A DNA stretch of 64,000 nt, taken from the NCBI RefSeq assembly GCF_026571515.1, contig NW_026853701.1, positions 1-64,000 on the forward strand, read 5' to 3'. The notes beneath the pieces were generated by a model. It ran no database searches and was not told the origin of the DNA. It saw nothing but the letters and a program-made list of their open reading frames with translations. The translations under genes were made by a program, and so were the position numbers. The DNA is from Ruditapes philippinarum (Eukaryota). Positions 203 to 28,228 of the stretch are shown here, in pieces; within the stretch, counting starts at the first letter, position 1; each line of letters opens with the position of its first letter.

Positions 203-300
203 ATCATATCTCCAGTATGAATTCTCATCTCTTTTAGTATAAAGTTACATCTAGCTTTTATGTCCTGGCTTAATGTCTTCTGTTGTTCATGCCTTTTGCA
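203..300 (-). pseudogene. 98-bp orphan fragment of the array transposase (CKRHEQQKTLSQDIKARCNFILKEMRIHTGDM)
   Basis: Near-identical to 6782-6878, 9413-9508 and 13101-13197. Confidence 0.85.
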
Positions 301-3886: not shown

Positions 3887-4392
3887 NNNNNNNNNNNNNN
3901 NNNNNNNNNNNNNNNNNNNNNNNNNNNNNNNNNNNNNNNNNNNNNNNNNNNNNNNNNNNNNNNNNNNNNNNNNNNNNNNNNNNNNNNNNNNNNNNNNNNN
4001 NNNNNNNNNNNNNNNNNNNNNNNNNNNNNNNNNNNNNNNNNNNNNNNNNNNNNNNNNNNNNNNNNNNNNNNNNNNNNNNNNNNNNNNNNNNNNNNNNNNN
4101 NNNNNNNNNNNNNNNNNNNNNNNNNNNNNNNNNNNNNNNNNNNNNNNNNNNNNNNNNNNNNNNNNNNNNNNNNNNNNNNNNNNNNNNNNNNNNNNNNNNN
4201 NNNNNNNNNNNNNNNNNNNNNNNNNNNNNNNNNNNNNNNNNNNNNNNNNNNNNNNNNNNNNNNNNNNNNNNNNNNNNNNNNNNNNNNNNNNNNNNNNNNN
4301 NNNNNNNNNNNNNNNNNNNNNNNNNNNNNNNNNNNNNNNNNNNNNNNNNNNNNNNNNNNNNNNNNNNNNNNNNNNNNNNNNNNNNNNNNNNN
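3887..4392. other. Assembly gap (N run)
   Basis: Run of N. ORFs 3669-4475, 3859-4431 and 3870-4526 are artefacts of it. Confidence 1.
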
Positions 4393-5133
4393 ACAGTTAT
4401 TTGCCTTTCGTTGACCACAATAAGGAAGTAAATCCGCATAAAAGAGTGCCTGTGTTTAATGCCAGATATAAATGAATAATTGAATGAAAGAGATAGAAAA
4501 AAAGGCCATTTCCTGACAGAATTCATTTCAAATAGTTGGTAAATGCCAAGTTTGATCCAGATTTTATGCGAGTAAGTATTTTTTTAGTGTTTTTCTACAT
4601 GACAGAACTCACATGGTTCCGGCTAATTACTGAAAACTGTCAGACTGATGTATTTTGAACTGAAATGCTGTGGAAAAATGATGAATGACCCCTAGTTTGC
4701 TATAGCTAGAATTATTTATCTTGGATGGTACTGTAAGCACAAGTGACTTTGATTTGATTGGAGAGTTAGTAAAATTGCCACAGGGTTTAATGTTTATATA
4801 GAACATATAGTGAAATTAATTGTGGTCTGAGGCCTGATTAGAAGCGTGTTTTTACATGGAGTAAATCTGTTTGACAGGTAATAACTTCATCATTTTTAGA
4901 GCAAATTTAATGAAACTTGGTCATGAAGCAGATAATTGATGTATAAATCTGAGTTTGTAATTAAATTACACAAGTGCTTTTATTTTCTTTGTATTATGTA
5001 ATTTTATATAATAATATATACATTTTTTAAAAAAATCTCAAAAAGCTACTTTCAGTTTAGAAATGTCTGTTTAAATATAGCCAGGAGGTCATTTCCTGTA
5101 CAGGTTACAGCCTCCCTTTAAATAAAAGTTAAA

Positions 5134-5496
5134 ATGGAAGCATTTTTTAAAAATTATTTAGAAAAAAATCAATGAAAAATCTGTGCTAAACAGACAGGGC
5201 TGTATGATAGGGCAGGGGTGTATAAAGAAAGGACCAGTGGGCTATGGTATTATTATTATTTCCAAGTTTCCTGATGCACAGTGGCACACCATGCATGTTC
5301 ATAAACTTCTTTACCTGGTTCACAATAAAATTCTGTATGTTGAACCAGATTTAGAGGTCTCGTACCTGTGCCACGTGCTTCTGTGTGTCGGTGCTAACCA
5401 TTTGAGCCCCATTGCATCAATACCGAAAGGCTTAAGTGTGTGAACCGGGCCATTTGCTGCAGCCATGGGGTATACCGAGACTGTTTATATGTTTGA
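5134..5496 (+). pseudogene. His-Me finger (His-Cys box/I-PpoI-like) nuclease, copy 1, frameshifted
   Basis: Reconstructed MEAFFKNYLEK/INEKSVLNRQGCMIGQGCIKKGPVGYG..HVHKLLY..EVSYLCHVLLCVGANHL/PHCINTERLKCVNRAICCSHGVYRDC. Fits the C..G..GYG..H..Y..SHLCH..CV..HL..N..R..C pattern; two frameshifts; SH changed to SY. Confidence 0.8.
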
Positions 5497-6115
5497 GGTG
5501 AGTAATCGCTTTGTTTAAGAGACATATTTAAGGTGTTGATGGCCTCGGGATAAAGGTTGGTGAGTGCTTACGTGTCCTTTCATTTATTCTGATTGCATAT
5601 TTCCTTATATTGTCCTACATTTAAAGGACTCCTATTATAATCCTACAAGTATGTTTCTGCTCCCATTCTTTTTACTTGTTAAGCAATAACAGTGTATTTC
5701 AAGTAAAATTGGTCAGTTCACAAGTGCTAGACTTTGAATAATTGCTTATAAACAGCCATAGCCCATGAAAACTTGTTGAATTTTACTTAAAGCACTCTGG
5801 CATTGCAAAGAAATGCTAAAAGCCTGTGATTTAATTAATATAACATTTATTTCACAGTGTAAAATAACAACAGAGATGATAACAATTTCAAAATATCATG
5901 CAGGTTATGTTGAATGATACAGTAATGAAATATGAAATTCGCTTTAAAAGGAATAGTCCGTCACTTTTTAAGTAAACCATTTGTTAAGTTTAATTTCAGG
6001 TCTGTACACAGACAGCACATTTGTTTAAGATAGTTGTCTCGTGCGCAAACCGAATATTTATTCCCCACTGAAGAAACACTGTTTTTGTTTATCTGTTTAT
6101 ATCAAGGGAGATAAT

Positions 6116-7308
6116 TTATAGATTTTCTGAGTAAGTATGGTTGCTGTTGCCTCCCTTGGGTGTTGATGGTGTTAGATCCAACTGACTTTTCCTGTAATAT
6201 GATATTGTAGAGTGTGTCTTCTTGTATTTCAGATGTTCATGGAGTTGTCTACCCTTTGATAAAAGTTTGTGTTTAACTGTTTCAGGTTTTTTTAATACTG
6301 TCTCTGATATGTTTCTTCTCTTTGCATTTGATGTAGGCTATAAGCTGCTTTCTCAGAGAGACGAATCCCTAAACACCCCAATTTCTTCTCAGCGCTGTCC
6401 GCAACACCGTTATTTAAGCGGTGAATGGTAGAATTGAGGCGTCCATGAATATTCCGTGCGAAATCATTATTTTTTGGTTGCGACACACTAATAGATAGAT
6501 TCACCCGCTTCACGTTTCAACGTGCTGGTGCCCAATTTCATCTGTTTGATAGCGCTCACACTTATTTTCATTTTAACTATGTCAAAATTAATTGTTTGTC
6601 ATTCTCTTGTAGGCACAAGTTTGTAATTCTATGGCTGCTGAGGAACATGGAGCGGTTCCACCAGTTGTTTGCTACTCCACCAGAACACACGTATGAGTAG
6701 CGTCTAAACTTAGAGCAGTCCCCAGCATAACAGCTCACTGTAGCATCCAGAACACGAGGTAAATATTTTTTTGATAGTATTCATATCTCCAGTATGAATT
6801 CTCATCTCTTTTAGTATAAAGTTACATCTAGCTTTTATGTCCTGGCTTAATGTCTTCTGTTGTTCATGCCTTTTGCACAATTATAACACAGGTTAGTGTC
6901 TCTGATGTATCTACAAACATAAAAAGCACTTATTCAGGTAGATAAATGTACACAAAGGGGGTGATTATGCACAACTTCAGTGAATTACCTCCCTTTATTT
7001 ATTTAGAAACTTAATGTTTTAAACTGTCAACAATTCTCATGCTCGAACAGGAATGTTTATCGTCTATTTTCATTGTAGATGAAGTCGCAGAAGCACTTTG
7101 CGGCAACAGCATTGCACTTCTTGAGAGCTCAACTACCATCTGCAGTAGACCTGGATGTCACTGGAAATTCATCTACAGTCAGTCTGTTTGCTGATAGATC
7201 TTTAGACTCAGTATCTACATGACAAGAGTGTCAAATTCAGCCTTGATTCCAGATGGTGAGTTCCTTTGCTTGTAAACCAGCTAATTTCTTCTTCGGGTCG
7301 CCTCGCAT
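6116..7308 (-). pseudogene. DDE transposase remnant (Kolobok/'Mutator-like' type), internally deleted, copy 1
   Basis: N-terminal piece plus C-terminal part CYAGDCS..WW..TSTLKREA/VNLSISVSQPKN..HRLNNG..SQLD..NHTYS. The 5' part is indel-rich in this copy. Confidence 0.65.
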
Positions 7309-7418
7309 TAATTGTACAGCAGTTGTGTATAGTATGCGTAAGTTACTTTTTGATGAAAGAGTTCAGGAGCCTGGGTCCTATTTATATCAGTAAATTGTGG
7401 AATTTCTGAATTTTTCAA

Positions 7419-7944
7419 AGGGTTTTCAGAATCACACAGAGGGACCCGATCTTTGGCATTCTAAGGTGTGATTTTAAGTACTGGGTAACATGTGTGTGGA
7501 ATGTGTGCATTGACACATTGACTGAGCAGCCACTGGGAGGTAATTATTAGCAGTGCAACACTTTTCAACAACTGGACCAAAAAAAAAAACTATTTGAAAA
7601 AATACAACAAATGCACTTTCTACTGACATAACTTTTGATATGTATGCTTATGATAATAATGAACATAATTTACAAGGTAAAATGCATGCGCTTTCAAGAA
7701 TACCGATTTGACAAATGAGAATTTACAAATAGCAAGTATATGTAATGCAGTTATAGTTTTATGTTATAATCGAAAGTTAAATGGAATATTTGTCTTAAAA
7801 CGATATTTAGAAAAAAAAATATTTATTGTAGTCTTTATAGATGATATTAAGTAAATTTGAATCACTGGATGAGATTACTTTTTTATTTCATGCAAAATCA
7901 TCCAGTAATAAAAAGTTATAGCAATTTTCAGTTTTATGGTACTT
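7419..7944. repeat. Putative LTDR copy 1 (indel-rich)
   Basis: Alignable to 10044-10521 with many small indels; followed by TTAA. Confidence 0.5.
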
Positions 7945-8745
7945 TTAATTTGTATAAGTGCGGCTGGTTCAGATGGCTGATCTGGTACCTGGTAGCATAC
8001 AGGCTGTGATTCATCGTATATGTGATAAGACTGGAAACTTTCCAGATAATATGGAGATAGCTTAGGATGATGTATGCAAATTTATTCAAGATCGATGAAC
8101 ATTTTTGACCTAAATAGGAATCAGTCCACAGCTATTTGCCTTTCGTTGACCACCATAAGGAAGTAAATCCGCATAAAAGAGTGCCTGTGTTTAATGCCAG
8201 ATATAAATGAATAATTGAATGATTGCATATTTCCTTATATTGTCCTACATTTAAAGGACTCCTATTATAATCCTACAAGTATGTTTCTGCTCCCATTCTT
8301 TTTACTTGTTAAGCAATAACAGTGTATTTCAAGTAAAATTGGTCAGTTCACAAGTGCTAGACTTTGAATAATTGCTTATAAACAGCCATAGCCCATGAAA
8401 ACTTGTGGAATTTTACTTAAAGCACTCTGGCATTGCAAAGAAATGCTAAAAGCCTGTGATTTAATTAATATAACATTTATTTCACAGTGTAAAATAACAA
8501 CAGAGATGATAACAATTTCAAAATATCATGCAGGTTATGTTGAATGATACAGTAATGAAATATGAAATTCGCTTTAAAAGGAATAGTCCGTCACTTTTTA
8601 AGTAAACCATTTGTTAAGTTTAAATTTCAGGTCTGTACACAGACAGCACATTTGTTTAAGATAGTTGTCTCGTGCGCAACCGAATATTTATTCCCCACTG
8701 AAGAAACACTGTTTTTGTTTATCTGTTTATATCAAGGGAGATAAT

Positions 8746-9936
8746 TTATAGATTTTCTGAGTAAGTATGGTTGCTGTTGCCTCCCTTGGGTGTTGATGGT
8801 GTTAGATCCAACTGACCTTTCCTGTAATATGATATTGTAGAGTGTGTCTTCTTGTATTTCAGATGTTCATGGAGTTGTCTACCCTTTGATAAAAGTTTGT
8901 GTTTAACTGTTTCAGGTTTTTTTAATACTGTCTCTGATATGTTTCTTCTCTTTGCATTTGATGTAGGCTATAAGCTGCTTTCTCAGAGAGACGAATCCCT
9001 AAACACCCCAATTTCTTCTCAGCGCTGTCCGCAACACCGTTATTTAAGCGGTGAATGGTAGAATTGAGGCGTCCATGAATATTCCGCGCGAAATCATTAT
9101 TTTTTGGTTGCGACACACTAATAGATAGATTCACCCGCTTCACGTTTCAACGTGCTGGTGCCCAATTTCATCTTTTCGATAGCGCTCACACTTATTTTCA
9201 TTTTAACTATGTCAAAATTAATTGTTTGTCATTCTCTTGTAGGCACAAGTTTGTAATTCTATGGCTGCTGAGGAACATGGAGCGGTTCCACCAGTTGTTT
9301 GCTACTCCACCAGAACAACACGTATGAGTAGCGTCTACACTTAGAGCAGTCCCCAGCATAACAGCTCATTGTAGCATCCAGAACACGAGGTAAATATTTT
9401 TTTGATAGTATTCATATCTCCAGTATGAATTCTCATCTCTTTTAGTATAAAGTTACATCTAGCTTTTATGTCCTGGCTTAATGTCTTCTGTTGTTCATGC
9501 CTTTTGCACAATTATAACACAGGTTTAGTGTCTCTGATGTATCTACAAACATAAAAAGCACTTATTCAGGTAGATAAATGTACACAAAGGGGGTGATTAT
9601 GCACAACTTCAGTGAATTACCTCCCTTTATTTATTTAGAAACTTAATGTTTTAAACTGTCAACAATTCTCATGCTCGAACAGGAATGTTTATCGTCTATT
9701 TTCATTGTAGATGAAGTCGCAGAAGCACTTGGCGGCAACAGCATTGCACTTCTTGAGAGCTCACTACCATCTGCAGTAGGCCTGGATGTCACTGGAAATT
9801 CATCTACAGTCAGTCTGATGATAGATCTCTTAGACTCAGTATCTACATGACAAGAGTTGTCAAACTTCAAGCCTTTATTCCATGGTGAGTTCCTTTGCTT
9901 GAACCCAGCTAATTTCTTCTTTCGGTCGCCTCGCAT
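8746..9936 (-). pseudogene. DDE transposase remnant, copy 2
   Basis: ORF 9643-9936 (MRGDRKKKLAGFKQRNSPWNKGLK..MRIVD) plus C-terminal fragments including ORF 8922-9143. Confidence 0.7.
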
Positions 9937-10043
9937 AATTGTACAGCAGTTGTGTATAGTATGAAGGTAAGTTACTTTTTGATAAAGAGTCAGGAGCTGG
10001 GTCCATATTTATACAGTAAATGGAATTTCTGGAATTTCTTCAA

Positions 10044-10521
10044 AGGTGGTTTTCAAGAATCACACAGAGGGACCCAGACTTTGGCATTCCTAGGTGGTGA
10101 TTTAAGTACCTGGGGTAACAGTGTGTGGAATGCTGTGCATTGGACCACATTGACTGAGCAGCCACCTGGGGAGGTAATTATTAGGCAGTGGCACTTTTCT
10201 ACTGGACATAACTTTTGAACCAGTTGGCTTATGATAATAAATGAAACATAATTTTAAAGGTAAAATGCATGCCTTTCAAGAAATAACCGATTTGACAAAT
10301 GAGAATTTACAAAAATTATGTAATGCAGTTATAGTATTATGTAATATGTCTAAATTTGGATATATTTGGTCTTAAAACGATATTTAAGAAAAAAAAAATA
10401 TTTATGTTAGTTTTAGATGCATATTTAAGTAATATTTGAATCACTGATGATATTACTTTTTATTTCATGAAAATCATCCAAGTAATAAAAAAGTTATAGC
10501 AATTTTAGTTTTAGAGTACTT
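10044..10521. repeat. Putative LTDR copy 2 (478 bp)
   Basis: TCAA|AGGTGGTTTTCAA...TTTTAGAGTACTT|TTAA. Weak terminal inverted match (7/13); begins ~107 bp upstream of the transposase ATG. Boundaries are inferred. Confidence 0.55.
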
Positions 10522-11450
10522 TTAATTTGATAAGCTGCGGCCTGGCTTCAGGGCTGAATGGTACCTATGGTACATAACAGGCTGTGAATTTATCAGTATA
10601 TGTGATTAAGACTGGAAACTTTCCAGAATAATATGAGATAGCCTAGGAATGATGTATGCAAAATTTTATTAAGATCAGATGAACATTTTTGACTAAATAG
10701 GAATCAGTCCACAGTTATTTGCCTTTCGTTGACCACAATAAGGAAGTAAATCCGCATAAAAGAGTGCCTGTGTTTAATGCCAGATATAAATGAATAATTG
10801 AATGAAAGAGATAGAAAAAAGGCCATTTCCTGACAGAATTCATTTCAAATAGTTGGTAAATGCCAATTTTGATCCAGATTTTATGCGAGTAAGTATTTTT
10901 TTAGTGTTTTTCTACATGACAGAACTCACATGGTTCCGGCTAATTACTGAAAACTGTCAGACTGATGTATTTTGAACTGAAATGCTGTGGAAAAATGATG
11001 AATGACCCCTAGTTTGCTATAGCTAGAATTATTTATCTTGGATGGTACTGTAAGCACAAGTGACTTTGATTTGATTGGAGAGTTAGTGATATTGCCACAG
11101 GGTTTAATGTTTATATAGAACATATAGTGAAATTAATTGTGGTCTGAGGCCTGATTAGAAGCTTGTTTTTACATGGAGTAAATCTGTTTGACAGGTAATA
11201 ACTTTATCATTTTTAGAGCAATTTTAATGAAACTTGGTCATGAAGCAGATAATTGATGTATAAATCTGAGTTTGTAATTAAATTACACAAGTGCTTTTAT
11301 TTTCTTTGTATTATGTAATTTTATATAATAATATATACATTTTTTTAAAAAATCTCAAAAAGCTACTTTCAGTTTAGAAATGTCTGTTTAAATATAGCCA
11401 GGAGGTCATTTCCTGTACAGGTTACAGCCTCCCTTTAAATAAAAGTTAAA

Positions 11451-11813
11451 ATGGAAGCATTTTTTAAAAATTATTTAGAAAAAAATCAATGAAAAATCTG
11501 TGCCAAACAGACAGGGCTGTATGATAGGGCAGGGGTGTATAAAGAAAGGACCAGTGGGCTATGGTATTATTATTATTTCCAAGTTTCCTGATGCACAGTG
11601 GCACACCATGCATGTTCATAAACTTCTTTACCTGGTTCACAATAAAATTCTATATGTTGAACCAGATTTAGAGGTCTCGCACCTGTGCCACGTGCCACTG
11701 TGTGTCGGTGCTAACCATTTAGCCCCATTGCATCAATACCGAAAGGCTTAAGTGTGTGAACCGGGCCATTTGCTGCAGCCATGGAGTATACCGAGACTGT
11801 TTTATTTGTTTGA
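11451..11813 (+). pseudogene. His-Me finger nuclease, unit 3 copy (retains SHLCH)
   Basis: ORF 11500-11751 contains GYG..HVHKLLY..EVSHLCHVPLCVGANHL; the Cys/His tail continues in another frame. Confidence 0.85.
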
Positions 11814-12432
11814 GGTGAGTAATCGCTTTGTTTAAGAGACATATTTAAGGTGTTGATGGCCTCGGGATAAAGGTTGGTGAGTGCTTACGTGTCCTTTCAT
11901 TTATTCTGATTGCATATTTCCTTATATTGTCCTACATTTAAAGGACTCCTATTATAATCCTACAAGTATGTTTCTGCTCCCATTTTTTTTACTTGTTAAG
12001 CAATAACAGTGTATTTCAAGTAAAATTGGTCAGTTCACAAGTGCTAGACTTTGAATAATTGCTTATAAACAGCCATAGCCCATGAAAACTTGTGGAATTT
12101 TACTTAAAGCACTCTGGCATTGCAAAGAAATGCTAAAAGCCTGTGATTTAATTAATATAACATTTATTTCACAGTGTAAAATAATAACAGAGATGATAAC
12201 AATTTCAAAATATCATGCAGGTTATGTTGAATGATACAGTAATGAAATATGAAATTCGCTTTAAAAGGAATAGTCCGTCACTTTTTAAGTAAACCATTTG
12301 TTAAGTTTAAATTTCAGGTCTGTACACAGACAGCACATTTGTTTAAGAAAGTTGTCTCGTGCGCAACCGAATATTTATTCCCCACTGAAGAAACACTGTT
12401 TTTGTTTATCTGTTTATATCAAGGGAGATAAT

Positions 12433-13623
12433 TTATAGATTTTCTGAGTAAGTATGGTTGCTGTTGCCTCCCTTGGGTGTTGATGGTGTTAGATCCAACT
12501 GACTTTTCCTGTAATATGATATTGTAGAGTGTGTCTTCTTGTATTTCAGATGTTCATGGAGTTGTCTTCCCTTTGATAAAAGTTTGTGTTTAACTGTTTC
12601 AGGTTTTTTTAATACTGTCTCTGATATGTTTCTTCTCTTTGCATTTGATGTAGGCTATAAGCTGCTTTCTCAGAGAGACAAATCCCTAAACACCCCAATT
12701 TCTTCTCAGCGCTGTCCTCAACACCGTTATTTAAGCGGTGAATGGTACAATTGAGGCGTCCATGAATATTCCGCGCGAAATCATTATTTTTTGGTTGCGA
12801 CACACTAATAGATAGATTCACCCGCTTCACGTTTCAACGTGCTGGTGCCCAATTTCATCTTTTCGATAGCGCTCACACTTATTTTCATTTTAACTATGTC
12901 AAAATTAATTGTTTGTCATTCTCTTGTAGGCACAAGTTTGTAATTCTATGGCTGCTGAGGAACATGGAGCGGTTCCACCAGTTGTTTGTTACTCCACCAG
13001 AACACACGTATGAGTAGCTTCTACACTTAGAGCAGTCCCCAGCATAACAGCTCACTGTAGCATCCAGAACACGAGGTAAATATTTTTTTTTGATAGTATT
13101 CATATCTCCAGTATGAATTCTCATCTCTTTTAGTATAAAGTTACATCTAGCCTTTATGTCCTGGCTTAATGTCTTCTGTTGTTCATGCCTTTTGCACAAT
13201 TATAACACAGGTTTAGTGTCTCTGATGTATCTACAAACATAAAAAGCACTTATTCAGGTAGATAAATGTACACAAAGGGGGTGATTATGCACAACTTCAG
13301 TGAATTACCTCCCTTTATTTATTTAGAAACTTAATGTTTAAACTGTCAACAATTCTCATGCTCGAACAGGAATTTTTATCGTCTATTTTCATTGTAGATG
13401 AAGTCGCAGAAGCACTTGGCGGCAACAGCATTGCACCTCTTGAGAGCTCACTACCATCTGCAGTAGGCCTGGATGTCACTGGAAATTCATCTACAGTCAG
13501 TCTGATGATAGATCTCTTAGACCCAGTATCTACATGACAAGAGTTGTCAAACTTCAAGCCTTTATTCCATGGTGAGTTCCTTTGCTTGAACCCAGCTAAT
13601 TTCTTCTTTCGGTCGCCTCGCAT
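12433..13623 (-). pseudogene. DDE transposase remnant, copy 3
   Basis: ORFs 13315-13623, 12894-13199 and 12609-12830 are collinear pieces; T-x-K-x-E-A-x-N..PKN motif near 12790-12845. Confidence 0.7.
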
Positions 13624-13730
13624 AATTGTACAGCAGTTGTGTATAGTATGAAGGTAAGTTACTTTTTGATAAAGAGTCAGGAGCTGGGTCCATATTTATA
13701 CAGTAAATGGAATTTCTGGAATTTCTTCAA

Positions 13731-14207
13731 AGGTGGTTTTCAAGAATCACACAGAGGGACCCAGACTTTGGCATTCCTAGGTGGTGATTTAAGTACCTGG
13801 GGTAACAGTGTGTGGAATGCTGTGCATTGGACCACATTGACTGAGCAGCCACCTGGGGAGGTAATTATTAGGCAGTGGCACTTTTCTACTGGACATAACT
13901 TTTGAACCAGTTGGCTTATGATAATAAATGAAACATCATTTTAAAGGTAAAATGCATGCCTTTCAAGAAATAACCGATTTGACAAAATGAGAATTTACAA
14001 AAATTATGTAATGCAGTTATAGTATTATGTAATATGTCTAAATTTGGATATATTTGGTCTTAAAACGATATTTAAGAAAAAAAATATTTATGTTAGTTTT
14101 AGATGCATATTTAAGTAATATTTGAATCACTGATGAGATTACTTTTTATTTCATGAAAATCATCCAAGTAATAAAAAAGTTATAGCAATTTTAGTTTTAG
14201 AGTACTT
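13731..14207. repeat. Putative LTDR copy 3 (477 bp)
   Basis: Near-identical to 10044-10521 with the same TCAA and TTAA flanks. Confidence 0.55.
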
Positions 14208-15136
14208 TTAATTTGATAAGCTGCGGCCTGGCTTCAGGGCTGAATGGTACCTATGGTACATAACAGGCTGTGAATTCATCAGTATATGTGATTAAGACTG
14301 GAAACTTTCCAGAATAATATGAGATAGCCTAGGAATGATGTATGCAAAATTTTATTAAGATCAGATGAACATTTTTGACTAAATAGGAATCAGTCCACAG
14401 TTATTTGCCTTTCGTTGACCACAATAAGGAAGTAAATCCGCATAAAAGAGTGCCTGTGTTTAATGCCAGATATAAATGAATAATTGAATGAAAGAGATAG
14501 AAAAAAGGCCATTTCCTGACAGAATTCATTTCAAATAGTTGGTAAATGCCAATTTTGATCCAGATTTTATGCGAGTAAGTATTTTTTTAGTGTTTTTCTA
14601 CATGACAGAACTCACATGGTTCCGGCTAATTACTGAAAACTGTCAGACTGATGTATTTTGAACTGAAATGCTGTGGAAAAATGATGAATGACCCCTAGTT
14701 TGCTATAGCTAGAATTATTTATCTTGGATGGTACTGTAAGCACAAGTGACTTTGATTTGATTGGAGAGTTAGTAATATTGCCACAGGGTTTAATGTTTAT
14801 ATAGAACATATAGTGAAATTAATTGTGGTCTGAGGCCTGATTAGAAGCTTGTTTTTACATGGAGTAAATCTGTTTGACAGGTAATAACTTTATCATTTTT
14901 AGAGCAATTTTAATGAAACTTAGTCATGAAGCAGATAATTGATGTATAAATCTGAGTTTGTTATTAAATTACACAAGTGCTTTTATTTTCTTTGTATTAT
15001 GTACTTTTATATAATAATATATACATTTTTTAAAAAAATCTCAAAAAGCTACTTTCAGTTTAGAAATGTCTGTTTAAATATAGCCAGGAGGTCATTTCCT
15101 GTACAGGTTACAGCCTCCCTTTAAATAAAAGTTAAA

Positions 15137-15499
15137 ATGGAAGCATTTTTTAAAAATTATTTAGAAAAAAATCAATGAAAAATCTGTGCCAAACAGACAG
15201 GGCTGTATGATAGGGCAGGGGTGTATAAAGAAAGGACCAGTGGGCTATGGTATTATTATTATTTCCAAGTTTCCTGATGCACAGTGGCACACCATGCATG
15301 TTCATAAACTTCTTTACCTGGTTCACAATAAAATTCTGTATGTTGAACCAGATTTAGAGGTCTCGTACCTGTGCTACGTGCTTCTGTGTGTCGGTGCTAA
15401 CCATTTGAGCCCCATTGCATCAATACCGAAAGGCTTAAGTGTGTGAACCGGGCCATTTGCTGCAGCCATGGGGTATACCGAGACTGTTTATTTGTTTGA
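15137..15499 (+). pseudogene. His-Me finger nuclease, unit 4 copy (SYLCY)
   Basis: ORF 15186-15446; same two frameshift sites; both His of SHLCH are replaced by Tyr. Confidence 0.8.
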
Positions 15500-16594
15500 G
15501 GTGAGTAATCGCTTTGTTTAAGAGACATATTTAAGGTGTTGATGGCCTCGGGATAAAGGTTGGTGAGTGCTTACGTGTCCTTTCATTTATTCTGATTGCA
15601 TATTTCCTTATATTGTCCTACATTTAAAGGACTCCTATTATAATCCTACAAGTATGTTTCTGCTCCCATTCTTTTTACTTGTTAAGCAATAACAGTGTAT
15701 TTCAAGTAAAATTGGTCAGTTCACAAGTGCTAGACTTTGAATAATTGCTTATAAACAGCCATAGCCCATGAAAACTTGTGGAATTTTACTTAAAGCACTC
15801 TGGCATTGCAAAGAAATGCTAAAAGCCTGTGATTTAATTAATATAACATTTATTTCACAGTGTAAAATAACAACAGAGATGATAACAATTTCAAAATATC
15901 ATGCAGGTTATGTTGAATGATACAGTAATGAAATATGAAATTCGCTTTAAAAGGAATAGTCCGTCACTTTTTAAGTAAACCATTTGTTAAGTTTAAATTT
16001 CAGGTCTGTACACAGACCGCACATTTGTTTAAGATAGTTGTCTCGTGCGCAACCGAATATTTATTCCCCACTGAAGAAACACTGTTTTTGTTTATCTGTT
16101 TATATCAAGGGAGATAATTTATTCTGAGTAAGTATGGTTGCTGTTGCCTCCCTTGGGTGTTGATATTATTTGTGGTTATCTAAGTTATATAGTGTTTTTT
16201 ATGTAAATTGGATTGAAATCAATCCGATATCGGACGCTAGGTTGAGGTTGGCTTATATTTACTGTATTTTCTCCACGGTAAAAGTAAGATAAGTATAATT
16301 TCGTTCTCTGAGAAGCATATAATGATTCTAATTGAACGCACATTTTACTTTAAAATGTTGTGTGCCTCCGCATGACTGTATTTTTTAAAGAATTTACCAG
16401 ATACCCATAAACACACCAAGGTGATTCCAACATAGTATTATAAATGATTTCATTCCTATATGATAGTGCAAGATCAGAACATTAATCATCAGTTATAGTC
16501 ATAACCCTCCATTTGTCTTCTTGTTTTGAAAAAGTTTACTACTTTCAATTTAGTTTCTTAAAGACATTTTCTACAGATTTATGAAATTTAATCC

Positions 16595-17470
16595 TTTCAT
16601 AGAATTTTCTAAATTTTTGTATGATAAGTAAAACTTAATCGCGAATTCAAAAATAAAAAGAAAAATATATGTTGACGTGTTGGATTTCTTGAAAAATGGC
16701 AGTTTCCATGGTAACCGTATATCTCAAAACTGTCAAAAAGCCAAACTGTGTTATAACAAATGGAAAATGTATAAGATAGCTTAACGCACACAACAAGCAT
16801 TGTTTTATGCAAAGATAGCTTATCTTATTATTTTGTATGAAACAAATGATAATCTGAACATATTTCTTTAAAAAATTAGTTTTCCATGTTCCTTAACCGA
16901 ACAAAAAATGAGAAAAATAAACATGAATTCTGCGAATAATTAAAGATATTGAAAAGTTTCTTTCATAGGATTTTCTATTTTTTTGTATGTTGTGTAAAAT
17001 TTAATGACGAATTCAAAAATAAAAAGAAAAATATATGTTGACGTGTTGAATTTTTTTTAAAATGGCAGTTTCCATGGTAACCGTATATCTCTAAATTGTC
17101 AAAATAGCAAAACTGTGTTATAAAAATGTATAAGACAGCTTATTACACACACAATAAACATAATTTTATACAAATCTTGCTTTATCTTAGGGTTTTATAT
17201 AAAACAAACGATAATTGGAACATATTTCTTTAAAAAAAATGAGTTTTTCATGCTTTTTAACTAAAAAAAATGAGAAAAATAAACATGAATTCTGTAATAA
17301 AAATAAAGCTATCAAGAAATTTCTTTCATAGAATTTTCTACATTTTTGATATATCAAGTAAAATTTTATGGTGGATTAAAAAATAGAAATAAAAATATAT
17401 GTTGACGTGTTAGTTGTTTTGTAAACGGGCAGTTTCCATGATATGCGCATATGCCAACTGTCAAAATTAC
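16595..17470. repeat. Tandem repeat, ~365-bp unit, ~2.4 copies
   Basis: TTTCATAG(A/G)ATTTTCTA..AAATATATGTTGACGTGTT..GGCAGTTTCCATG starts at 16595, 16961 and 17324. Confidence 0.85.
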
Positions 17471-19099
17471 CACGCTTTCTTAAGAAATATCAGTGTGTTA
17501 TACTAAATGTATTGTCATATATACAACAAAAACATGTGGTAACAAAAATTCCTTTTTCTTTTTATGTAATATTAAGTAAATGATACTGAATATGTTTTTA
17601 AAACAGGTTATATAGGGCTATATTATTTTTTCACTCGACTAACATACCCGAACAGTAAGCAAGTATTTAGAAATTTACAAAGAAAATAATGAAATTCGGA
17701 ACATTTCTTAGATATTGTTTTTGTTTTTTATTCAACACTTTTAAGATATATATATCATTTTAAACTTCTTTGGCCAGTTGAAGTGGCGACGCACTTTCGT
17801 CACTTTACCACAAGTGGGTGGGGTAACGCGCGCCGAATCATCATCAATGCTATCGTACTAATGCTAGGAGAACTCCTTTATCTGATGTTGTCTAAACGAT
17901 CTCTTATTCTTTTTAACCGATCTCCTCCTGAACATTTAGAAATATCTATTCTGTATTATTTACTCACTGTTTGTTTATAGCCGAAATTTAAACACTTATC
18001 CGAGTACTATTCAACTTGACCTTTTTTTGAAGAGAAATTATCCGTGATTATCTTTCTTGGAAGCGTAAAACGATGCGCACAAAAAAACAACAACCGAAAA
18101 CGTCTTTAACAGTGCAGTGATCTCTCCGTTTAAAATGAAAAACGTTACGTAACATGTGCGAAGAATTTGGCAATTAACCAGTATGCGAAGTAGTTCTGTA
18201 AAGAAGCCAAGTGAACTATTTGCTAAAGCGTATGTAGCAAATTCTTTCTGCCTACACAGTATACACATGATGCTGCACTATTGGAAAAATATGTTTGTTT
18301 AGCGTACGTATGGAATAGAAATGTATTGATAGACGGACAGTGTTTTAAAAACGGAGATTTATATATCAGGTATGCTAATTTGCCTTTTTGATTTAAACAT
18401 GGACAAAGGATATTGACATCTTATTTCAAATCTACCCACAGAAACGATGAAAAATTATGTCACATTTCTTGCTAACAGAATATTATCACATCAATTTAGC
18501 GTAATTCTGTTTAGGAAATTCTACCAATAAGGTACATGATTTATGATTTTTTGTGAATATCAAACATTTTGTACTTCTCAACTAAACTTGGTTGCCGAGA
18601 TAACTCATTTGAAACAATCATAAATTGATAATAACGTAGGCATTGCCTATGAACGGTCAAGTCAGATAAATAATCAAAGTGCTGAAGGCACTGCAGTTGG
18701 GACGTACTTGAAGTCAACATAACCATTATTTACTATTTCGGATAGATAATTCAATGAGTGAAGGGTGTTGCCGGTTGATAATATAAAGTGCAAAATTCAG
18801 TAAATGAATAGTAGTTGAATCAATTATTCTATGACATAGTTCAAATATAATATTTAGGTTACAAGTAGGTCCATCACAAACTGTTATTGGCCCTTTTTGA
18901 CAAGGGCAACAAGCGAAATAAGAGCTGTCAGAGGAAACTGCAAGCTCGACTATTTTTAACACATAATAAAAAGAGACATAACTATGAAAAAATAATCAAT
19001 TATGATATAAATATATTTTTGTTTCAGTATCAAGAAAACACTCAAATGGTCAATTTTTAGCATCATATTATATGAATGTGGCTATGTCTTTAAAACTGA

Positions 19100-23329: not shown

Positions 23330-24860
23330 CCTAACAGTACAGACAGAATTTAGAGATTCGAACACAAGTCTAACAGAACGCTACCATTGACAGTTTATCT
23401 CAAGCAGACGATGAGGAGGTTGTATTTTTCAAAACTTCTGCAGAAGCTGAAGTTAAAAACACACAACACAGTAGAAGTGATGAGAATACATGTCAAGACA
23501 TATCAGAACTTCAAGATAGTGATGTGATGTCAGTTTGTTCACAATCTTCATAAGACTACCAACCACTTCAAATGTAGCAGTGAACACAGCTGATAGGCAA
23601 AGTCAAGATAGCAGTAATGTGCATGATGACATTTTGGTAAATACAATGTATAACAGGGGTTCTCAAAGATGTGGTAACAGAGTTAAGAAACTTTAAAGAA
23701 GCGCAACAAGTTTCTACAAATACCCAGGTTTTAGGTCGCCAGCCAAGAAGTTTCAATGAACTACACACCAACACAGCAAATTTTTCGGGTATGCAGAATC
23801 ACAGCCGACAGCCGCTATATAGTGAACAGTACAGACAGGAAGTCCCAATAAATTATAATGGAGGGGTCATTTTACAGGCCTTCACAAAGTCGTTCCATTT
23901 TAGATGGGCAAAACTACAATCATCATGACAGATAACATGATGCATATGGGCAACCTTATGGTTCTAGTGAGGTGTGCAATGGTTCAAATAGAGGAGCATA
24001 TATCAATCCAACCGTACAATCACAATGGCAACGGCCGAGAAATAATGAAAATATGCGTATACCATCGTTCAGTGGAAAAGATGATTGGGCAGTATTGATC
24101 GCACGTTTTGAAGCAATTGCTCGTCGTTTAAATTGGGATGATGAAGATAAATTAGACCAGCTACTTCCAAGGATTGAAGGGAAGGCGGCAGAATTTATAT
24201 TTTCACAACTCCAGCCTCATGTTTTATGTAATTATAGAGAATTGGTGCGTGAAATGAATAATAGATTGATGGTCATCGGATACAGGGATAGGCATATTAG
24301 AGATGAGGACTTAGTCAGGAGATTTCTGGATGGATTGAGAAAGAATGAGGCGCGTTTTGAGGTTGAGTATCACAAAGAACCAGCAACAATAGACGAAGCT
24401 GTATTTTATGCAGTAAATTTCATTCAGACTCGAGCTTCTATTGGACATGACAGAAAATTAAGTAAATTTACAAGGCGAGCAATAGAAGATTCGACTGAAA
24501 ATGATGATAAATGTGAAGAGAGGGTGTTTCGAGTTCCTGAGAGAAAGAACAAAATGACAACTGAGTGAGGAAATCGCAATGAGATGACTGCCACACATCA
24601 GGAAGAGAATACCAGTTATAGACAAAAACAGATGTTGCAGAAAATAATGGAAAGATTAGAGAAATTAGAAGGAGCAAATAAGCCAGATAATAATAGAAGA
24701 TGATTTAGTAAAACTAATACAGTTGAGTGTTTCAATTGTCATCAAAAAGGCCATTATGCACGAGACTGTCCAGATAAACAAAATGGGCAAAGAAAAATGA
24801 AAATAAGACATGAAAGAAAGAACAACACTGAAATTCAATCAACACTGAGCCTTTAAACTA
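23330..24860 (+). pseudogene. gag: gag (disrupted)
   Basis: ORF 23972-24568 (IPSFSGKDDW..RFEAIA..W..DKL..L..G.A) and CCHC knuckle CFNCHQKGHYARDC at ~24728-24770. Start is approximate. Confidence 0.85.
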
Positions 24861-24899
24861 CCAAGGACCAACCTTTGAGGCCAGGGGGAGGTCCGCTTG

Positions 24900-27800
24900 A
24901 AGAGTATGGGCCATTCTAGAGAGAATACAGAAGAAGTAGGTGATGTTTATAGAGCAAGAAGCCTGTGTGATGGTGTCTATGTGAAGAGAGCCATAGAGGG
25001 TGTTCCACGTATGTTCACGGGGCTTCAAAGACAATTGTTTCTACCAAGATATATGAAAGGATTAATAAATCTAAAAGACCAACTCTTCAAAAGTCTGTGT
25101 GTTTAAAAGGGGCAAGCGGCTCACCAATAAAAGAGAGAGGTAAAGCTGAGTTTAATATAGAGTTAGGACAATATGCGATCATCAGTGAAGCTGTGGTTCC
25201 TGAAATAGAGGTTGATGCTCTGTTGGGCTTTGATGTTTTAATGGGGAGCAAGAAAGGACCTGCAGATATACCCTTGAGTAAAAATAAGATTATTTTGGAT
25301 GGAATTGAGATTACAACTATCCAGATTGGGAAACACAAAAAGATTAGGCGAGTGGTGGTAGCCAAAGATGTTAACATTCCGGGTCAATCGGACGCAGTTA
25401 TTCATGCTTTTGTTGAGAGGGCAGAAACATATGACAATGAAGGTCAAGCAGACTATTTGGTAGAACCTACAGATTCATTTAAGGAAAGCTACCATTTATT
25501 GATGGCATCAACTTTGATATATATAAATCAAGGTACTACGTGTAAATTGCGGATACTAAATCCTTTTGCGTGTGAGATATCTTTGAAACAAGACGCAGAA
25601 ATAGCAACTGCCGACATAATCGATAGGGTTGTTAGCATTATCGCAAATGAAGAAAATAGTCTTGAAGTTGAAAAAAATAACAGAATAAGAAAGGTTGACA
25701 AAAGCAAAACCCAACAGTGGAAAATAAATTTACAATTGCTGAAGAAAAAGAGGTACCTTAGCATCTTCAAGAACTGTACAAGAAATCTGCAGAGGGAAAA
25801 TTAGAGCATGAAAAGCATATTCTAGCAGGGTTGCTTGAAAAGTTTGGGGATACATTCTCTAGAAATGAATGGGATATTGGATTGACAAGTTTAACAGAGC
25901 ACTCAATTAATTCAAGAAATGCCACACCAGTAAAACAGAGGCCTAGGAAAGTACCAATAGCTTATGCGGCATAAGCAAAAGAAGCAATCGAAGACCTTCT
26001 AAGAAAAGGAGTTATGCAAAAAAGTACATCTCCATGGTCAAGTCCAATAGTATTTGTACGAAAGAAATCTAGCGCCATACGGTCATGTGTCGATTATAGA
26101 AGGGTGAATGCGTTAGTAAAGCCAGATGGTTTTCCTCTCCCTCGTGTACAAGATTGTCTAGACGCAGTAGCAGGTTCTTCTTTATTTAGAAGTTTAGATC
26201 TTACAAGTGGTTATTTCCAGATTCCACTTAAAAAGAAGACATTCCAAAAAGTGCTTTTTCATGTAAATTTGGTCAATATGAGATGGTTAGAATGCCTTTC
26301 GGTTTAAACAATGCTGCAAGTACGTTTCAAAGAACAATGGAGTAAGCACTTCAAGGTTTGCAATGGGTTACTTGTTTGGTGTACATTGATGATATTATCA
26401 TATTCGGTGCTGATTTTCAAGAACACATCAGTAGAGTGGAGGAAGTTCTTAGACGAATAAGAGATGCTGGTCTAAAACTTAAACCAGACAAATGTCATCT
26501 GCTGCAAACAGAAGTTGTCTTTCTTTGACATGTGGTTTCAAAAGAAGGTATTAAGCCAGATCCTACAAATCTATCCAAAATTGTACAATGGCCAAAACCC
26601 CAGAATGCAAAGAAGGCAAAGCAATTCGTAGCAACAGGTTAATATTACAGGCGTTTTATTAAGGACTTTGCTAAAATTGCGAGACCTTTGATAGAGCATA
26701 CAAAAAAGGATAAAGCATTTATTTGGGATGAACATTGCGAAAAGGCATTTGCAACAATTAAAGAAGCCTTAATAAGCCAATAAGTGATGGGATATCCTTT
26801 GAACCATGGTGGCGTCTTTTTGCTTGATGCTGATGTGTCGGGAGTAGGAATTGGTGTCGTTCTTCAACAAATTCAATATGATAAAAAGAGAGAGTTTTAG
26901 CTTATGCTAGCAGAGCAATGAACAAAGCCGAAAGAAACTACTGTGTAACAGAAGAAGAATTACTCGCAGTTGTTTTCTTTGTGCAATATTTTCGACAGTA
27001 CTAACTAGGAAGGCATTTTACACAGAGAACCGATCACCAAGTATTAATTTGGTTATTCAGTTTGAAATAACCTTCTGGAAAGATTGCCAGCTGGATAGAG
27101 ATTTTGGCACCTTTTGATTTCACCATTGAAGAAAACAAGGACAAAACAAGGAAGAAAACAAGGACACTGTGATGCACTGTCTAGGTGTGAAAATGCTAAA
27201 GATTGTTCATGTCATGATGTTTATATGAATGAGCCTTTAAAAGGCGATCCATGTAAGAAATGTAGGAACAGAGCGAATGTTATGATGCTGAAAGTTAAAG
27301 ATAAACAGAATTAACAGACTGAATTTTCTCTTAAAGAACAAGTAAAGAACCACAACCAGGTCCTTCAAGACAATCTCAGTTTCAAATTAACCCAAACTGG
27401 TTGTGGACCAATACGGCAGAGGATTTAGCAAAGAAGCAAGCTACGGATAGTGACATTGGACCAATTTATGAAGCTAAAGAAGAGAATAAGAAACCTCCAA
27501 GTTCAGATACGATGGTCAAGAGCCCTGCCTGCAGGCATTACTGGATTTTGTGGGAAAATCTGCATTTACAGGATGGTGTTTTAATCATTAGGTCGAGAGA
27601 TTAGATTACCAGCAGATTTGGTATATGGTTTTGCTTCAAATCCAAAAGAGGAACCAGAATATGCAACTTATATAGCCAAGCCAATAGACTGTATTTGAAG
27701 TTTAGTGCCAAGCAAAGTAAAACGATCTACGATACAAAGACCTCTTATCATGAATACAAAGCAGGTACCGTGGTATGGTAATTACATGAAACGAAGAAGG

Positions 27801-28012
27801 TGGGAGTCACACCGAAATTAGAGAAGATGTTTGACGGACCATTCATCATAAAAGAAAAATTTTCAAACGTGAATTTTGTTATACAAATGGACAAAGATGG
27901 CAAGGAGAAGTTAGTCCGCCATGATAAGCTGAAACCATATGTTAGTGTTAATATTCCAAGTTGGTTACAGAAGATCAGCAAGACATTAATAAAGAAAAGC
28001 TCCAGTCAGTAG
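24900..28012 (+). pseudogene. pol: pol (protease, RT, RNase H, integrase with core deleted)
   Basis: SPWSSPIVFVRKK..CVDYRRVN..LDLTSGYFQI; MPFGL; VYIDDII (~26380); RNase H YASR..ERNYC..ELLAV, TDH; C-terminal DGPF..VRHDKLKPY. Many stops and frameshifts. Confidence 0.92.
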
Positions 28013-28228
28013 ACTATTGTAGTCCATGAATAGCATATGTAGCAGTACCTTTAGATGTTGCAGTATTGTAAATACTGTAAGAGTTATATCAAGAATAAAC
28101 ATGTCAGCAAAACTCATCAAAATCAACCATTGTCAAGATTGTTAAGTTTGTTGTCTGTCAACAATTCTCCATGCCTATATGTTTTCAGATATCAAAAATT
28201 TGTAACCCTATTGGTAAAAATGTTCAAA

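What the first reader, a model, noticed from the sequence alone, without database searches (positions are those of the whole stretch)
4393..16163. Satellite-like array of a composite DNA transposon pairing a homing-endonuclease-type nuclease with a transposase (KolobokP-like)
Seen: the 3.69-kb unit is not anonymous satellite. Joining frameshifts gives a ~120-aa His-Cys-box nuclease (GYG..SHLCH..CV..HL..N.ER..C..C..H..C) on + converging on a DDE transposase on -. Each gene points inward from a shared ~478-bp segment bounded by TCAA and TTAA. Established (from memory): KolobokP elements, common in bivalves, have LTDR-INT-LTDR structure, TTAA targets and these two genes. Inference: this is a non-autonomous derivative multiplied as INT-LTDR-INT-LTDR, i.e. 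a transposon turning into a macrosatellite, with the LTDR possibly a bidirectional promoter. The lineage is probably described; this family and array may not be.
Basis: partly seen in the sequence, partly recalled or inferred. Interest (0 to 1): 0.8.

Follow-up and report, generated by a model that had tools for sequence, protein, structure and literature searches.

The report
Tandem array of KolobokP transposon copies
This stretch is a head-to-tail array of a crippled copy of KolobokP, a mollusc DNA transposon family published in 2022 that is already known to form such arrays, so it is real but ordinary.

Summary
Window 4393-16164 is a tandem array with a 3686-3687-bp period. It is a multimer, (LTDR-INT)n, of a non-autonomous KolobokP DNA transposon. 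Kojima & Bao 2022 (PMC9587614) described this architecture, its solo LTDRs and its multimers.

- **Family features.** Genome-wide copies give a 452-bp terminal direct repeat with GG..CC ends, a short imperfect inverted repeat and 4-bp target duplications. There are many solo repeats.
- **Proteins.** Longer copies carry a 659-aa DDE transposase (Pfam PF20700, E 6e-76) converging on a 121-aa His-Cys-box nuclease. The nuclease's only solved relative by profile is I-PpoI (E 2.8e-7). Foldseek's top four hits are I-PpoI chains.
The family, the two genes and the non-autonomous status are correct.
The repeat is 10700-11151 and 14386-14837, not 13731-14207. Targets are not TTAA.
- **State of the window's genes.** All are dead. 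The transposase lacks residues 95-405, and the nuclease has a stop and a frameshift.
- **In-place growth.** Two more multimers of this derivative exist (C8214, C10678). Units of each array cluster together.
- **Caveats.** An N run lies at the left edge, 7100-8116 is indel-rich and probably unpolished, and no long reads or usable RNA were available.

Novelty is low.

The parts
4393..4834 (+). LTDR copy a. Its first 11 positions fall inside the N run and were not looked up.
   Evidence: 438 of 442 columns identical to 10711-11151.
4835..8116 (+). INT unit 1, the internally deleted form. From about 7100 to 8116 it is indel-rich and probably an unpolished assembly patch.
   Evidence: 13-22 gap openings per 200 bp in the five full bins from 7193 to 7992 and 12 in the last, 124-bp bin, against 0-2 in the thirteen bins from 4393 to 6992; no short-read contig depth in 7200-7799 in any of 3 DNA runs. 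Alignment A1.
5144..5493 (+). His-Cys-box nuclease pseudogene, unit 1. It has an in-frame stop near codon 9, a frameshift after codon 90, and Tyr in place of the catalytic His.
   Evidence: tblastn with the intact 121-aa protein.
6119..7305 (-). Transposase remnant, unit 1. It keeps residues 1-94 and 406-658, with stops and frameshifts.
8117..8222 (+). Partial LTDR (its first 106 bp), followed directly by INT position about 756. About 1.1 kb is missing, including the nuclease gene. This junction is unverified.
   Evidence: One search shows no piece that bridges it.
8223..10699 (+). INT unit 2, truncated at its 5' end. It carries a transposase remnant at 8749-9933 (-).
10700..11151 (+). LTDR copy b (452 bp). 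Its termini are GG..CC, with an imperfect 17-bp terminal inverted repeat.
   Evidence: Boundaries from 6 solo LTDRs and the monomers.
11152..14385 (+). INT unit 3 (3234 bp), the reference unit.
11461..11806 (+). His-Cys-box nuclease pseudogene, unit 3, with an in-frame stop and a frameshift after the HL motif.
12436..13620 (-). Transposase remnant, unit 3 (residues 1-94 and 406-658). It lacks both catalytic D residues, the CCHC finger and the DxxH motif.
13193..13341 (+). 149-bp filler that replaces about 935 bp of transposase gene. 140 bp of it match the internal region of a second LTDR-bearing family.
14386..14837 (+). LTDR copy c.
   Evidence: 451 of 452 identical to copy b.
14838..16164 (+). 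INT unit 4, cut off at INT position about 1327 with no LTDR or target duplication. It carries a nuclease pseudogene at 15147-15496.

Best explanation
The array is a multimer of a non-autonomous KolobokP DNA transposon.

One unit is a 452-bp long terminal direct repeat (LTDR) plus a 3234-bp internal region (INT). The INT holds a dead His-Cys-box nuclease gene on + and, converging on it, a transposase gene on -. That transposase gene has lost residues 95-405, which include two of its three catalytic residues.

Shown: the derivative has moved as a unit. Dispersed monomers carry their own 4-bp target duplications, so it was presumably mobilised in trans by longer copies in the same genome that still have intact reading frames.

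Inferred: the array grew in place, by unequal crossover or recombination between LTDRs. Published work suggests the family's nuclease may stimulate this, supplied here in trans. LTDR excision or deletion then removed parts of it.
For: **Period and boundaries**
- Period.
- 61 matches from 38 scored of 288 candidates. Monomers have the form LTDR-INT-LTDR (L001, L002, L004). Solo LTDRs (L025-L030) are 97-99.6% identical to the window's.
- 42 LTDR matches from 40 scored of 164 candidates.
- Termini are GG..CC, with a 13-of-17 inverted repeat.

**Target duplications**
- 4 of 6 solos have a perfect 4-bp duplication: TTAT, TCTT, TACT, AGAT.
- Monomers L001 (ATAT), L002 (AGAC) and L033 (TACT) also do.

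**Transposase**
- Intact copy L035 matches PF20700 at E 6.3e-76 over profile positions 1-357 of 357.
- 12-sequence alignment: invariant D246, C291/C306/H310/C313, D349/D351, D376..H379, C454/C462/C469 and E528. C459 is kept in at least 90%.

**Nuclease**
- PF05551 at E 7.4e-7, 29.9 bits against a cut-off of 27.
- A profile of 63 relatives hits only I-PpoI chains in the PDB, 5 of 5 hits, best E 2.8e-7.
- The AlphaFold2 model has pLDDT 96.7. Foldseek ranks 1-4 are I-PpoI and rank 5 is I-HmuI.

**Growth in place**
- C8214 is LTDR-(INT)3-LTDR-INT-LTDR.
- C10678 has an INT-INT junction.
- Units of each array group together in a tree: window 83/74, C8214 92/99, C10678 91/93.

**Literature**
- All of these features are described for KolobokP in PMC9587614.
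Against: **The assembly is weak here**
- An N run abuts the left end.
- 7100-8116 has an indel-dominated error profile and no matching short-read contigs.
- No laid piece shown bridges the junction at 8222.
- The right end at 16164 has no LTDR or target duplication.
- The laid DNA runs are Logan contigs and the 'RNA' run is 150-nt reads, so nothing spans a whole LTDR between two INTs. No read-level proof of the multimer exists.

**Classification limits**
- Pfam labels the transposase 'Mutator-like', not Kolobok.
- I could not place it in a tree with Repbase Kolobok references.

**No fully competent partner seen**
- Five long copies were examined (L031-L035).
- L035 has both reading frames intact, but only the last 114 bp of its left LTDR remain.
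- L034 has both LTDRs, but a stop at transposase codon 2.

**Tree support**
- Support for the window's four units alone is modest (83/74).
- The starred clade (98/96) also holds L004.
Confidence: 0.92

Rival explanations
1. Assembly artefact. The locus really holds one monomer, or a different number or order of units. The assembler chained or patched repeat copies, for example with a raw long read.
For: - An N run lies directly at the left edge.
- 7100-8116 shows 13-22 gap openings per 200 bp in its full bins, against 0-2 in the thirteen bins from 4393 to 6992.
- That stretch has no contig depth in 7200-7799 in 3 of 3 DNA runs.
- The odd 1.1-kb deletion begins right where that patch ends (8222).
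Against: - Outside the patch, units differ from one another mainly by substitutions, 0-5 per 200 bp with few gaps. Real paralogous units would look like this.
- Two other loci in the same assembly carry multimers with different layouts.
- Multimers are a documented feature of the family (PMC9587614).
- The tool itself warns that a hole in contig depth proves nothing.
Confidence: 0.12
2. The multimer arose by integration of a circular LTDR-INT 'translocatable unit' into a resident LTDR, rather than by unequal crossover between sister chromatids or alleles.
For: - PMC9587614 proposes this as an alternative (Discussion).
- INT-INT junctions lacking 2-3 bp show that LTDRs are excised. That fits an excision and circle pathway.
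Against: - Nothing here tells it apart from unequal crossover. Both give identical products and keep the outer target duplications.
- No circle junction was sought or seen.
- For: detection of such circles.
Confidence: 0.25
3. The units are independent insertions of monomers next to or into one another, so the array is a nest of separate transposition events.
For: The family has moved as monomers with their own target duplications (L001, L002).
Against: - Adjacent units share a single LTDR with no target duplication between them.
- The four window units are each other's nearest relatives. Path lengths are 0.003-0.013, against 0.017 or more to any dispersed copy.
Confidence: 0.02

Closest known systems
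KolobokP lineage of Kolobok DNA transposons (Kojima & Bao, Mob DNA 2022, PMC9587614)
   Same: - LTDR-INT-LTDR architecture, with an LTDR of about 450 bp (452 here).
- LTDR ends 5'-RR..YY-3' with a short imperfect inverted repeat.
- 4-bp target duplications.
- A DDE transposase with a CCHC finger after the first D, a DxxH motif and a second Cys cluster before the E.
- A convergent His-Cys-box nuclease of about 120 aa.
- Abundant solo LTDRs, (LTDR-INT)n-LTDR multimers, and directly abutted INTs with a few bp missing.
- A mollusc host.
   Different: Nothing in kind. Specifics:
- The autonomous-type copies are about 4.94-5.08 kb (L031, L032). That is slightly above the 4.0-4.7 kb the paper gives for oyster families.
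- INT-INT junctions lack 2 or 3 bp, where the paper reports 3-4 bp.
- The deleted derivative carries 149 bp of filler taken from a second LTDR family.
- I could not check whether this family is among the paper's 228 families, because the supplements were closed.
I-PpoI, a His-Cys-box homing endonuclease of a Physarum group I intron (PDB 1A73, 1EVW and others)
   Same: - The S-H-L-C-H..C..H-L..E..N..R..C core aligns.
- Residues matching I-PpoI S97, H98, C100, C105, H110, E114, N119 and C125 are invariant or at least 90% conserved among 63 relatives. The mapping onto I-PpoI numbers is my reading of the alignment together with the paper's numbering.
- It is the best structural match.
   Different: - Smaller: 121 aa against 162-163.
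- Only 17-20% identical, with TM-score about 0.5.
- It is encoded by a transposon, not an intron.
- Its target site is unknown.
- The window's own copies are broken.
Tandem LTR-INT-LTR-INT arrays and solo LTRs of LTR retrotransposons and TRIMs
   Same: Direct terminal repeats recombine to give solo repeats and tandem multimers that share one repeat between units.
   Different: - No reverse transcriptase; a DDE transposase instead.
- The repeats carry their own inverted termini and can be excised.
- Target duplications are 4 bp.

Membership tests
KolobokP | [quoted passage not shown] | tested here: met
   The LTDR is 452 bp (10700-11151, 14386-14837). Monomers L001, L002, L031 and L032 carry one at each end.
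KolobokP | LTDR has its own short (11-18 bp) terminal inverted repeats and 5'-RR..YY-3' ends | tested here: met
   The ends are GG...CC. 13 of the first 17 bases match the reverse complement of the last 17. I read this by eye and ran no statistical control.
KolobokP | Target-site duplications of 3-5 bp around solo LTDRs and monomers | tested here: met
   Perfect 4-bp duplications in 4 of 6 solos and in monomers L001, L002 and L033. L032 fits 3 bp only, and L031, L028 and L030 have none clear. None is TTAA.
KolobokP | DDD/E transposase with a CCHC finger after the first D, a C/DxxH motif, and a zinc finger between that motif and the E | tested here: met
   Met in intact copy L035. D246, C291-C306-H310-C313, D349/D351, D376-x-x-H379, C454/C462/C469 and E528 are invariant in 12 sequences, and C459 is kept in at least 90%. 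The window's copies lack residues 95-405.
KolobokP | Small His-Me (His-Cys-box) nuclease gene downstream of and convergent with the transposase gene | tested here: met
   PF05551 at 29.9 bits, cut-off 27. Profile hit to I-PpoI at E 2.8e-7. Fold match. Convergent layout.
KolobokP | Solo LTDRs, (LTDR-INT)n-LTDR multimers and abutted INT-INT junctions with a micro-deletion | tested here: met
   Solos L025-L030, and LTDR matches on 19 contigs that had no INT match. Multimers in the window, C8214 and C10678. Junctions lack 2 bp (C8214, both junctions) and 3 bp (C10678).
KolobokP | Transposase falls inside the KolobokP clade of the Kolobok superfamily in a tree with reference families | not testable with these tools
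   No Repbase sequences are on hand and the paper's alignments are in closed supplements. Pfam calls the domain 'Mutator-like' (PF20700). Named relatives are from Haliotis, Patella, Mytilus, Pinctada, Mizuhopecten and a nemertean. Mytilus, Pinctada, Mizuhopecten and Haliotis are in the paper's host list, and its phyla include Nemertea.
His-Cys-box homing endonucleases (I-PpoI group) | Catalytic His and Asn, plus two zinc sites built from conserved Cys and His | tested here: met
   Met in intact copies. H76, C23, C78, C83, C109, H112 and C118 are invariant. S75, H88, E92, N97, R100 and C103 are at least 90% conserved in 63 sequences. Not met by the window's copies. Each of the three has a stop at about codon 9 and a frameshift after codon 90. 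Units 1 and 4 also have His76 changed to Tyr.
His-Cys-box homing endonucleases (I-PpoI group) | Sequence-specific cleavage of a defined homing site | not testable with these tools
   No perfect 6+6 palindrome in the LTDR. The target is unknown. The 2026 review passage I read says the model awaits experiment.
Satellite or macrosatellite DNA | Long homogeneous array of many units, maintained as an array | tested here: inconclusive
   Only about 3.2 units are assembled, one of them truncated, beside an N run. The true length is unknown because there were no long reads.

The most novel reading that the evidence does not exclude
This genome may hold a recently active KolobokP family. It has solo LTDRs up to 99.6% identical to the array's, and one copy with both reading frames open. 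Its deleted derivative is multimerised at an unusually high share of its loci: 3 of the 6 I saw (window, C8214, C10678, against C3604, C13186 and the partial C9502). This is despite the derivative's own nuclease gene being dead. If so, multimerisation is driven in trans, and this species would be a natural system for testing the still untested 'nuclease-induced unequal crossover' model. The filler taken from a second LTDR family would point to template switching between co-resident families during break repair.
Probability: 0.25. Interest if true: 0.45.

Novelty: new member of a known kind. Interest (0 to 1): 0.18.

Why it matters
It matters little for discovery. The element type, its two genes, its solo repeats and its multimers were all described in 2022.

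It is useful as annotation in four ways:
- It corrects the repeat boundaries.
- It shows the array units are dead derivatives.
- It flags a probable unpolished patch and an unverified junction in the assembly.
- It shows the same derivative multimerised at two more loci.

The published idea that the transposon's own homing-type nuclease drives array growth was still untested according to a 2026 review passage. A family with near-identical solo repeats and open reading frames, as here, would be a reasonable place to test it.

Tried and rejected
**Searches that gave little or nothing**
- Tandem Repeats Finder cannot see the array, because its longest period is 500.
- Pfam on ten window pieces gave only a sub-threshold PF05551 hit and chance hits (CIAPIN1, Usher_TcfC, SAVED).
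- A single-sequence search of the nuclease against PDB sequences found nothing. Only the 63-sequence profile reached I-PpoI.
- The search for homologous proteins with the nuclease gave just 7 proteins.

**Ideas rejected**
- TTAA targets.
- An LTR retrotransposon: there is a transposase, and the only reverse-transcriptase-like ORF seen in the window (46937-49147) lies far outside the array.
- Real divergence of 7100-8116: the differences are mostly 1-bp indels.

**Expression**
- Run X24 is labelled RNA-Seq.
- All 5 bins that hold a GATC (8805, 9824, 10673, 10871, 12492) have summed depth of 5.9 or more. GATC-free stretches such as 11200-12399 are near zero.
- Three loose-end places sit exactly on the two GATC sites of the LTDR.
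- Both mate directions are equal.
- I take it for a proximity-ligation-type library and draw no conclusion on transcription or on a promoter in the LTDR.

**Host species**
- Not identified. Runs are coded, cluster members carry no organism, and the window's long ORFs are all transposon-like.
- 'Mollusc' rests on two small-share runs labelled mollusc metagenome and on the named relatives.

**Other dead ends**
- The two LTDR families share no similarity. Their local score was 22, against a shuffle mean of 20.9 and maximum of 33.
- Earlier scan notes held nothing on this element.
- A search for 'PF20700' in papers found 0.
- I could not see the supplements of PMC9587614 (Table S1, Data S1-S5). 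They may already list this family and species.

Full report
**1. The observation**

The window holds a tandem array from 4393 to 16164.
- Exact-seed repeat finding gives four in-register copies spaced 2630, 3687 and 3686 bp.
- Self-BLAST gives 97-99% identity between units.
- The array begins at the first base after an N run (3887-4392) and stops abruptly at 16164.
- No further piece of the unit occurs in the rest of the window, apart from a 97-bp fragment at 204-300.

The 3.69-kb period is therefore real.

**2. Where the unit's natural boundaries are**

I searched the whole 1.41-Gb assembly with one unit. That gave 61 matches, from 38 scored of 288 candidates.

I then realigned the fetched loci to the window. 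The copies fall into three kinds:
- Monomers in which one segment is present at both ends (L001, L002, L004).
- Isolated copies of that segment alone (L025-L030, 97-99.6% identical).
- Longer copies.

The repeated terminal segment is window 10700-11151, equal to 14386-14837. It is 452 bp long.
- A search with it alone gave 42 matches, from 40 scored of 164 candidates.
- It starts GGAATCAG and ends with CTGAGGCC.
- 13 of its first 17 bases match the reverse complement of its last 17 (read by eye).
- 4 of 6 solos have perfect 4-bp flanking duplications: TTAT, TCTT, TACT, AGAT.
- L028 runs 26 bp into INT, and L030 has a ragged end.
- Monomers L001 (ATAT), L002 (AGAC) and L033 (TACT) have them too. 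L032 fits only 3 bp, and L031 is unclear.
- None is TTAA.

**3. The genes**

The window's own reading frames are fragments. They barely register in Pfam: PF05551 at E 0.049, and no transposase family.

Longer copies carry about 935 bp where the window has 13193-13341. One of them, C5209 (L035), has both frames open.

*The minus-strand protein* is 659 aa including its Met.
- It matches PF20700 'Mutator-like transposase' end to end at E 6.3e-76.
- 163 relatives were found. The named ones come from Haliotis, Patella, Mytilus, Pinctada, Mizuhopecten and a nemertean, at 54% identity or less.
- A 12-sequence alignment keeps these invariant: D246, C291/C306/H310/C313, D349/D351, D376-x-x-H379, C454/C462/C469 and E528. 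C459 is kept in at least 90%.
- That is a DDE triad with a CCHC finger after the first D, a DxxH motif and a second Cys cluster before the E.

*The plus-strand protein* is 121 aa.
- It passes PF05551 at 29.9 bits against a cut-off of 27.
- It has 1935 relatives at E of 0.001 or better.
- A 63-sequence profile hits only I-PpoI chains in the PDB, 5 of 5, best E 2.8e-7, across the SHLCH..C..HL..E..N..R..C core.
- The AlphaFold2 model has mean pLDDT 96.7.
- Foldseek ranks four I-PpoI chains first (probability 0.97-1.00, TM-score about 0.5, E about 4e-3 to 2e-2) and I-HmuI fifth. No hit reached E of 0.001.

**4. State of the window's copies**
- Every transposase remnant keeps residues 1-94 and 406-658 only, with further stops and frameshifts. 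Both catalytic D residues, the CCHC finger and DxxH are gone.
- The nuclease is present in units 1, 3 and 4, and absent from unit 2.
- In each it has a stop near codon 9 and a frameshift after codon 90.
- In units 1 and 4 the catalytic His is Tyr.

The array is therefore built from a non-autonomous derivative.

The same derivative, with the same 149-bp filler, occurs as monomers with their own target duplications on C3604 and C13186. So it has transposed as a unit.

Among the five long copies I examined, none is demonstrably complete:
- L035 has open frames, but only the last 114 bp of its left LTDR.
- L034 has both LTDRs, but a stop at transposase codon 2.

Most candidates were never scored, so this is not a census.

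**5. What it is**

Everything above matches KolobokP as described by Kojima & Bao 2022. I read the abstract, Results, Discussion and Methods of PMC9587614. The matching points are:
- LTDRs of about 450 bp.
- RR..YY ends with short inverted repeats.
- 3-5-bp target duplications.
- The two zinc-finger positions in the transposase.
- The convergent His-Cys-box nuclease, with I-PpoI and I-HmuI as HHpred matches.
- Richness in bivalves and other molluscs.
- Solo LTDRs, (LTDR-INT)n-LTDR multimers and abutted INTs with a few bases missing.

A 2025 paper also refers to Kolobok multimerisation in bivalves (passage read).

**6. How the array formed**

Layout of the window array:
- LTDR (4393-4834)
- INT1 (4835-8116)
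- the first 106 bp of an LTDR (8117-8222)
- INT2, from INT position about 756 (8223-10699)
- LTDR (10700-11151)
- INT3 (11152-14385)
- LTDR (14386-14837)
- INT4, cut at position about 1327 (14838-16164)

Two further loci carry multimers of the same derivative:
- C8214 is LTDR-(INT)3-LTDR-INT-LTDR.
- C10678 has LTDR-INT-INT...LTDR.
- Their INT-INT junctions lack 2 bp (both C8214 junctions, which are identical) and 3 bp (C10678).

In a maximum-likelihood tree of 20 unit segments, the units of each array group together. Support is 83/74 for the window (98/96 with L004 included), 92/99 for C8214 and 91/93 for C10678.

That favours growth in place over repeated insertion. Adjacent units also share one LTDR with no internal target duplication.

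Unequal exchange between LTDRs is the simplest mechanism. Whether a nuclease cut triggers it, or a circular LTDR-INT intermediate is involved, cannot be told from sequence. A 2026 review passage says the nuclease model awaits experiment.

**7. Caveats**
- From about 7100 to 8116, unit 1 differs from unit 3 mostly by 1-bp indels. There are 13-22 gap openings per 200 bp in the full bins, against 0-2 in the thirteen bins from 4393 to 6992, plus a 50-bp insertion.
- Three DNA runs show no contig depth in 7200-7799 at 95% identity or more. The tool warns that a hole proves nothing.
- I read this stretch as an unpolished long-read patch. The 1.1-kb deletion that starts where it ends (8222) is therefore unverified.
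- All DNA runs were short Logan contigs. The longest laid piece shown's list was 590 bp, so nothing spans an LTDR between two INTs.
- Depth over the LTDR is several-fold that over INT in all three DNA runs. This fits many solo LTDRs, but the tool states depth is not a copy number.
- The 'RNA' run tracks GATC sites and has ligation-like loose ends on them. Expression is untested.

**8. Verdict**

This is a real, correctly recognised but already described kind of element. At most it is a new family member.

Its LTDR coordinates and TTAA target do not. Interest is low.

Noticed in passing
L049:1097-4097 (G000 C13927); L047 (C5529); L048 (C5191); window 13193-13341: A second, protein-less family has the same architecture. 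It is a 3.0-kb monomer with 462-bp direct terminal repeats (99.4% alike) and AG..CT ends. It forms tandem arrays of period 2540 bp (C5529, at least 4 units) and about 3430 bp (C5191). 140 bp of its internal region, at 94-95% identity, is the filler at the deletion site of the window's derivative. Its LTDR shows no similarity to the window's LTDR.
   Followed up: partly
window 204-300: An isolated 97-bp fragment is 99% identical to INT 13100-13196 (transposase residues 406-437). Its right end coincides with the derivative's deletion breakpoint. It has no other element sequence around it and no link to the second family. Unexplained.
   Followed up: partly
window 7100-8116: An indel-rich stretch, including a 50-bp insertion near 7570-7620, with no matching short-read contigs in 7200-7799. 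It looks like raw long-read sequence used to close a gap inside the repeat.
   Followed up: yes
run X24 laid on window 7000-12999: A 2026 run labelled TRANSCRIPTOMIC RNA-Seq gives depth that follows GATC sites and equal mate directions. 816 of 1034 reads are only partly laid, and loose ends begin or end with GATC. It behaves like a Hi-C-type library, so it should not be used as expression evidence.
   Followed up: partly
window 4382-4392: The own-genome search listed the left LTDR as matching from 4382, which is 11 positions inside the window's N run. It suggests the leftmost LTDR is complete.
   Followed up: no
window 16594-17475: A 364-366-bp tandem repeat (3 copies, 66-88% alike) lies about 430 bp to the right of the array's abrupt end.
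   Followed up: no
window 23972-29043, 34516-35466 and 46937-49147: Other long ORFs in the window look like retroelement genes. These are gag- and protease-like ORFs, an endonuclease-like ORF and a 736-aa reverse-transcriptase-like ORF. I judged this by eye from the translations and ran no family search. Several 145-330-bp tandem repeat arrays were also listed.
   Followed up: no
L034:2208-2216 (G000 C11813): An otherwise full-length copy with both LTDRs has a stop at codon 2 of the transposase frame. It also has a deletion of about 112 bp near the right end of INT.
   Followed up: partly
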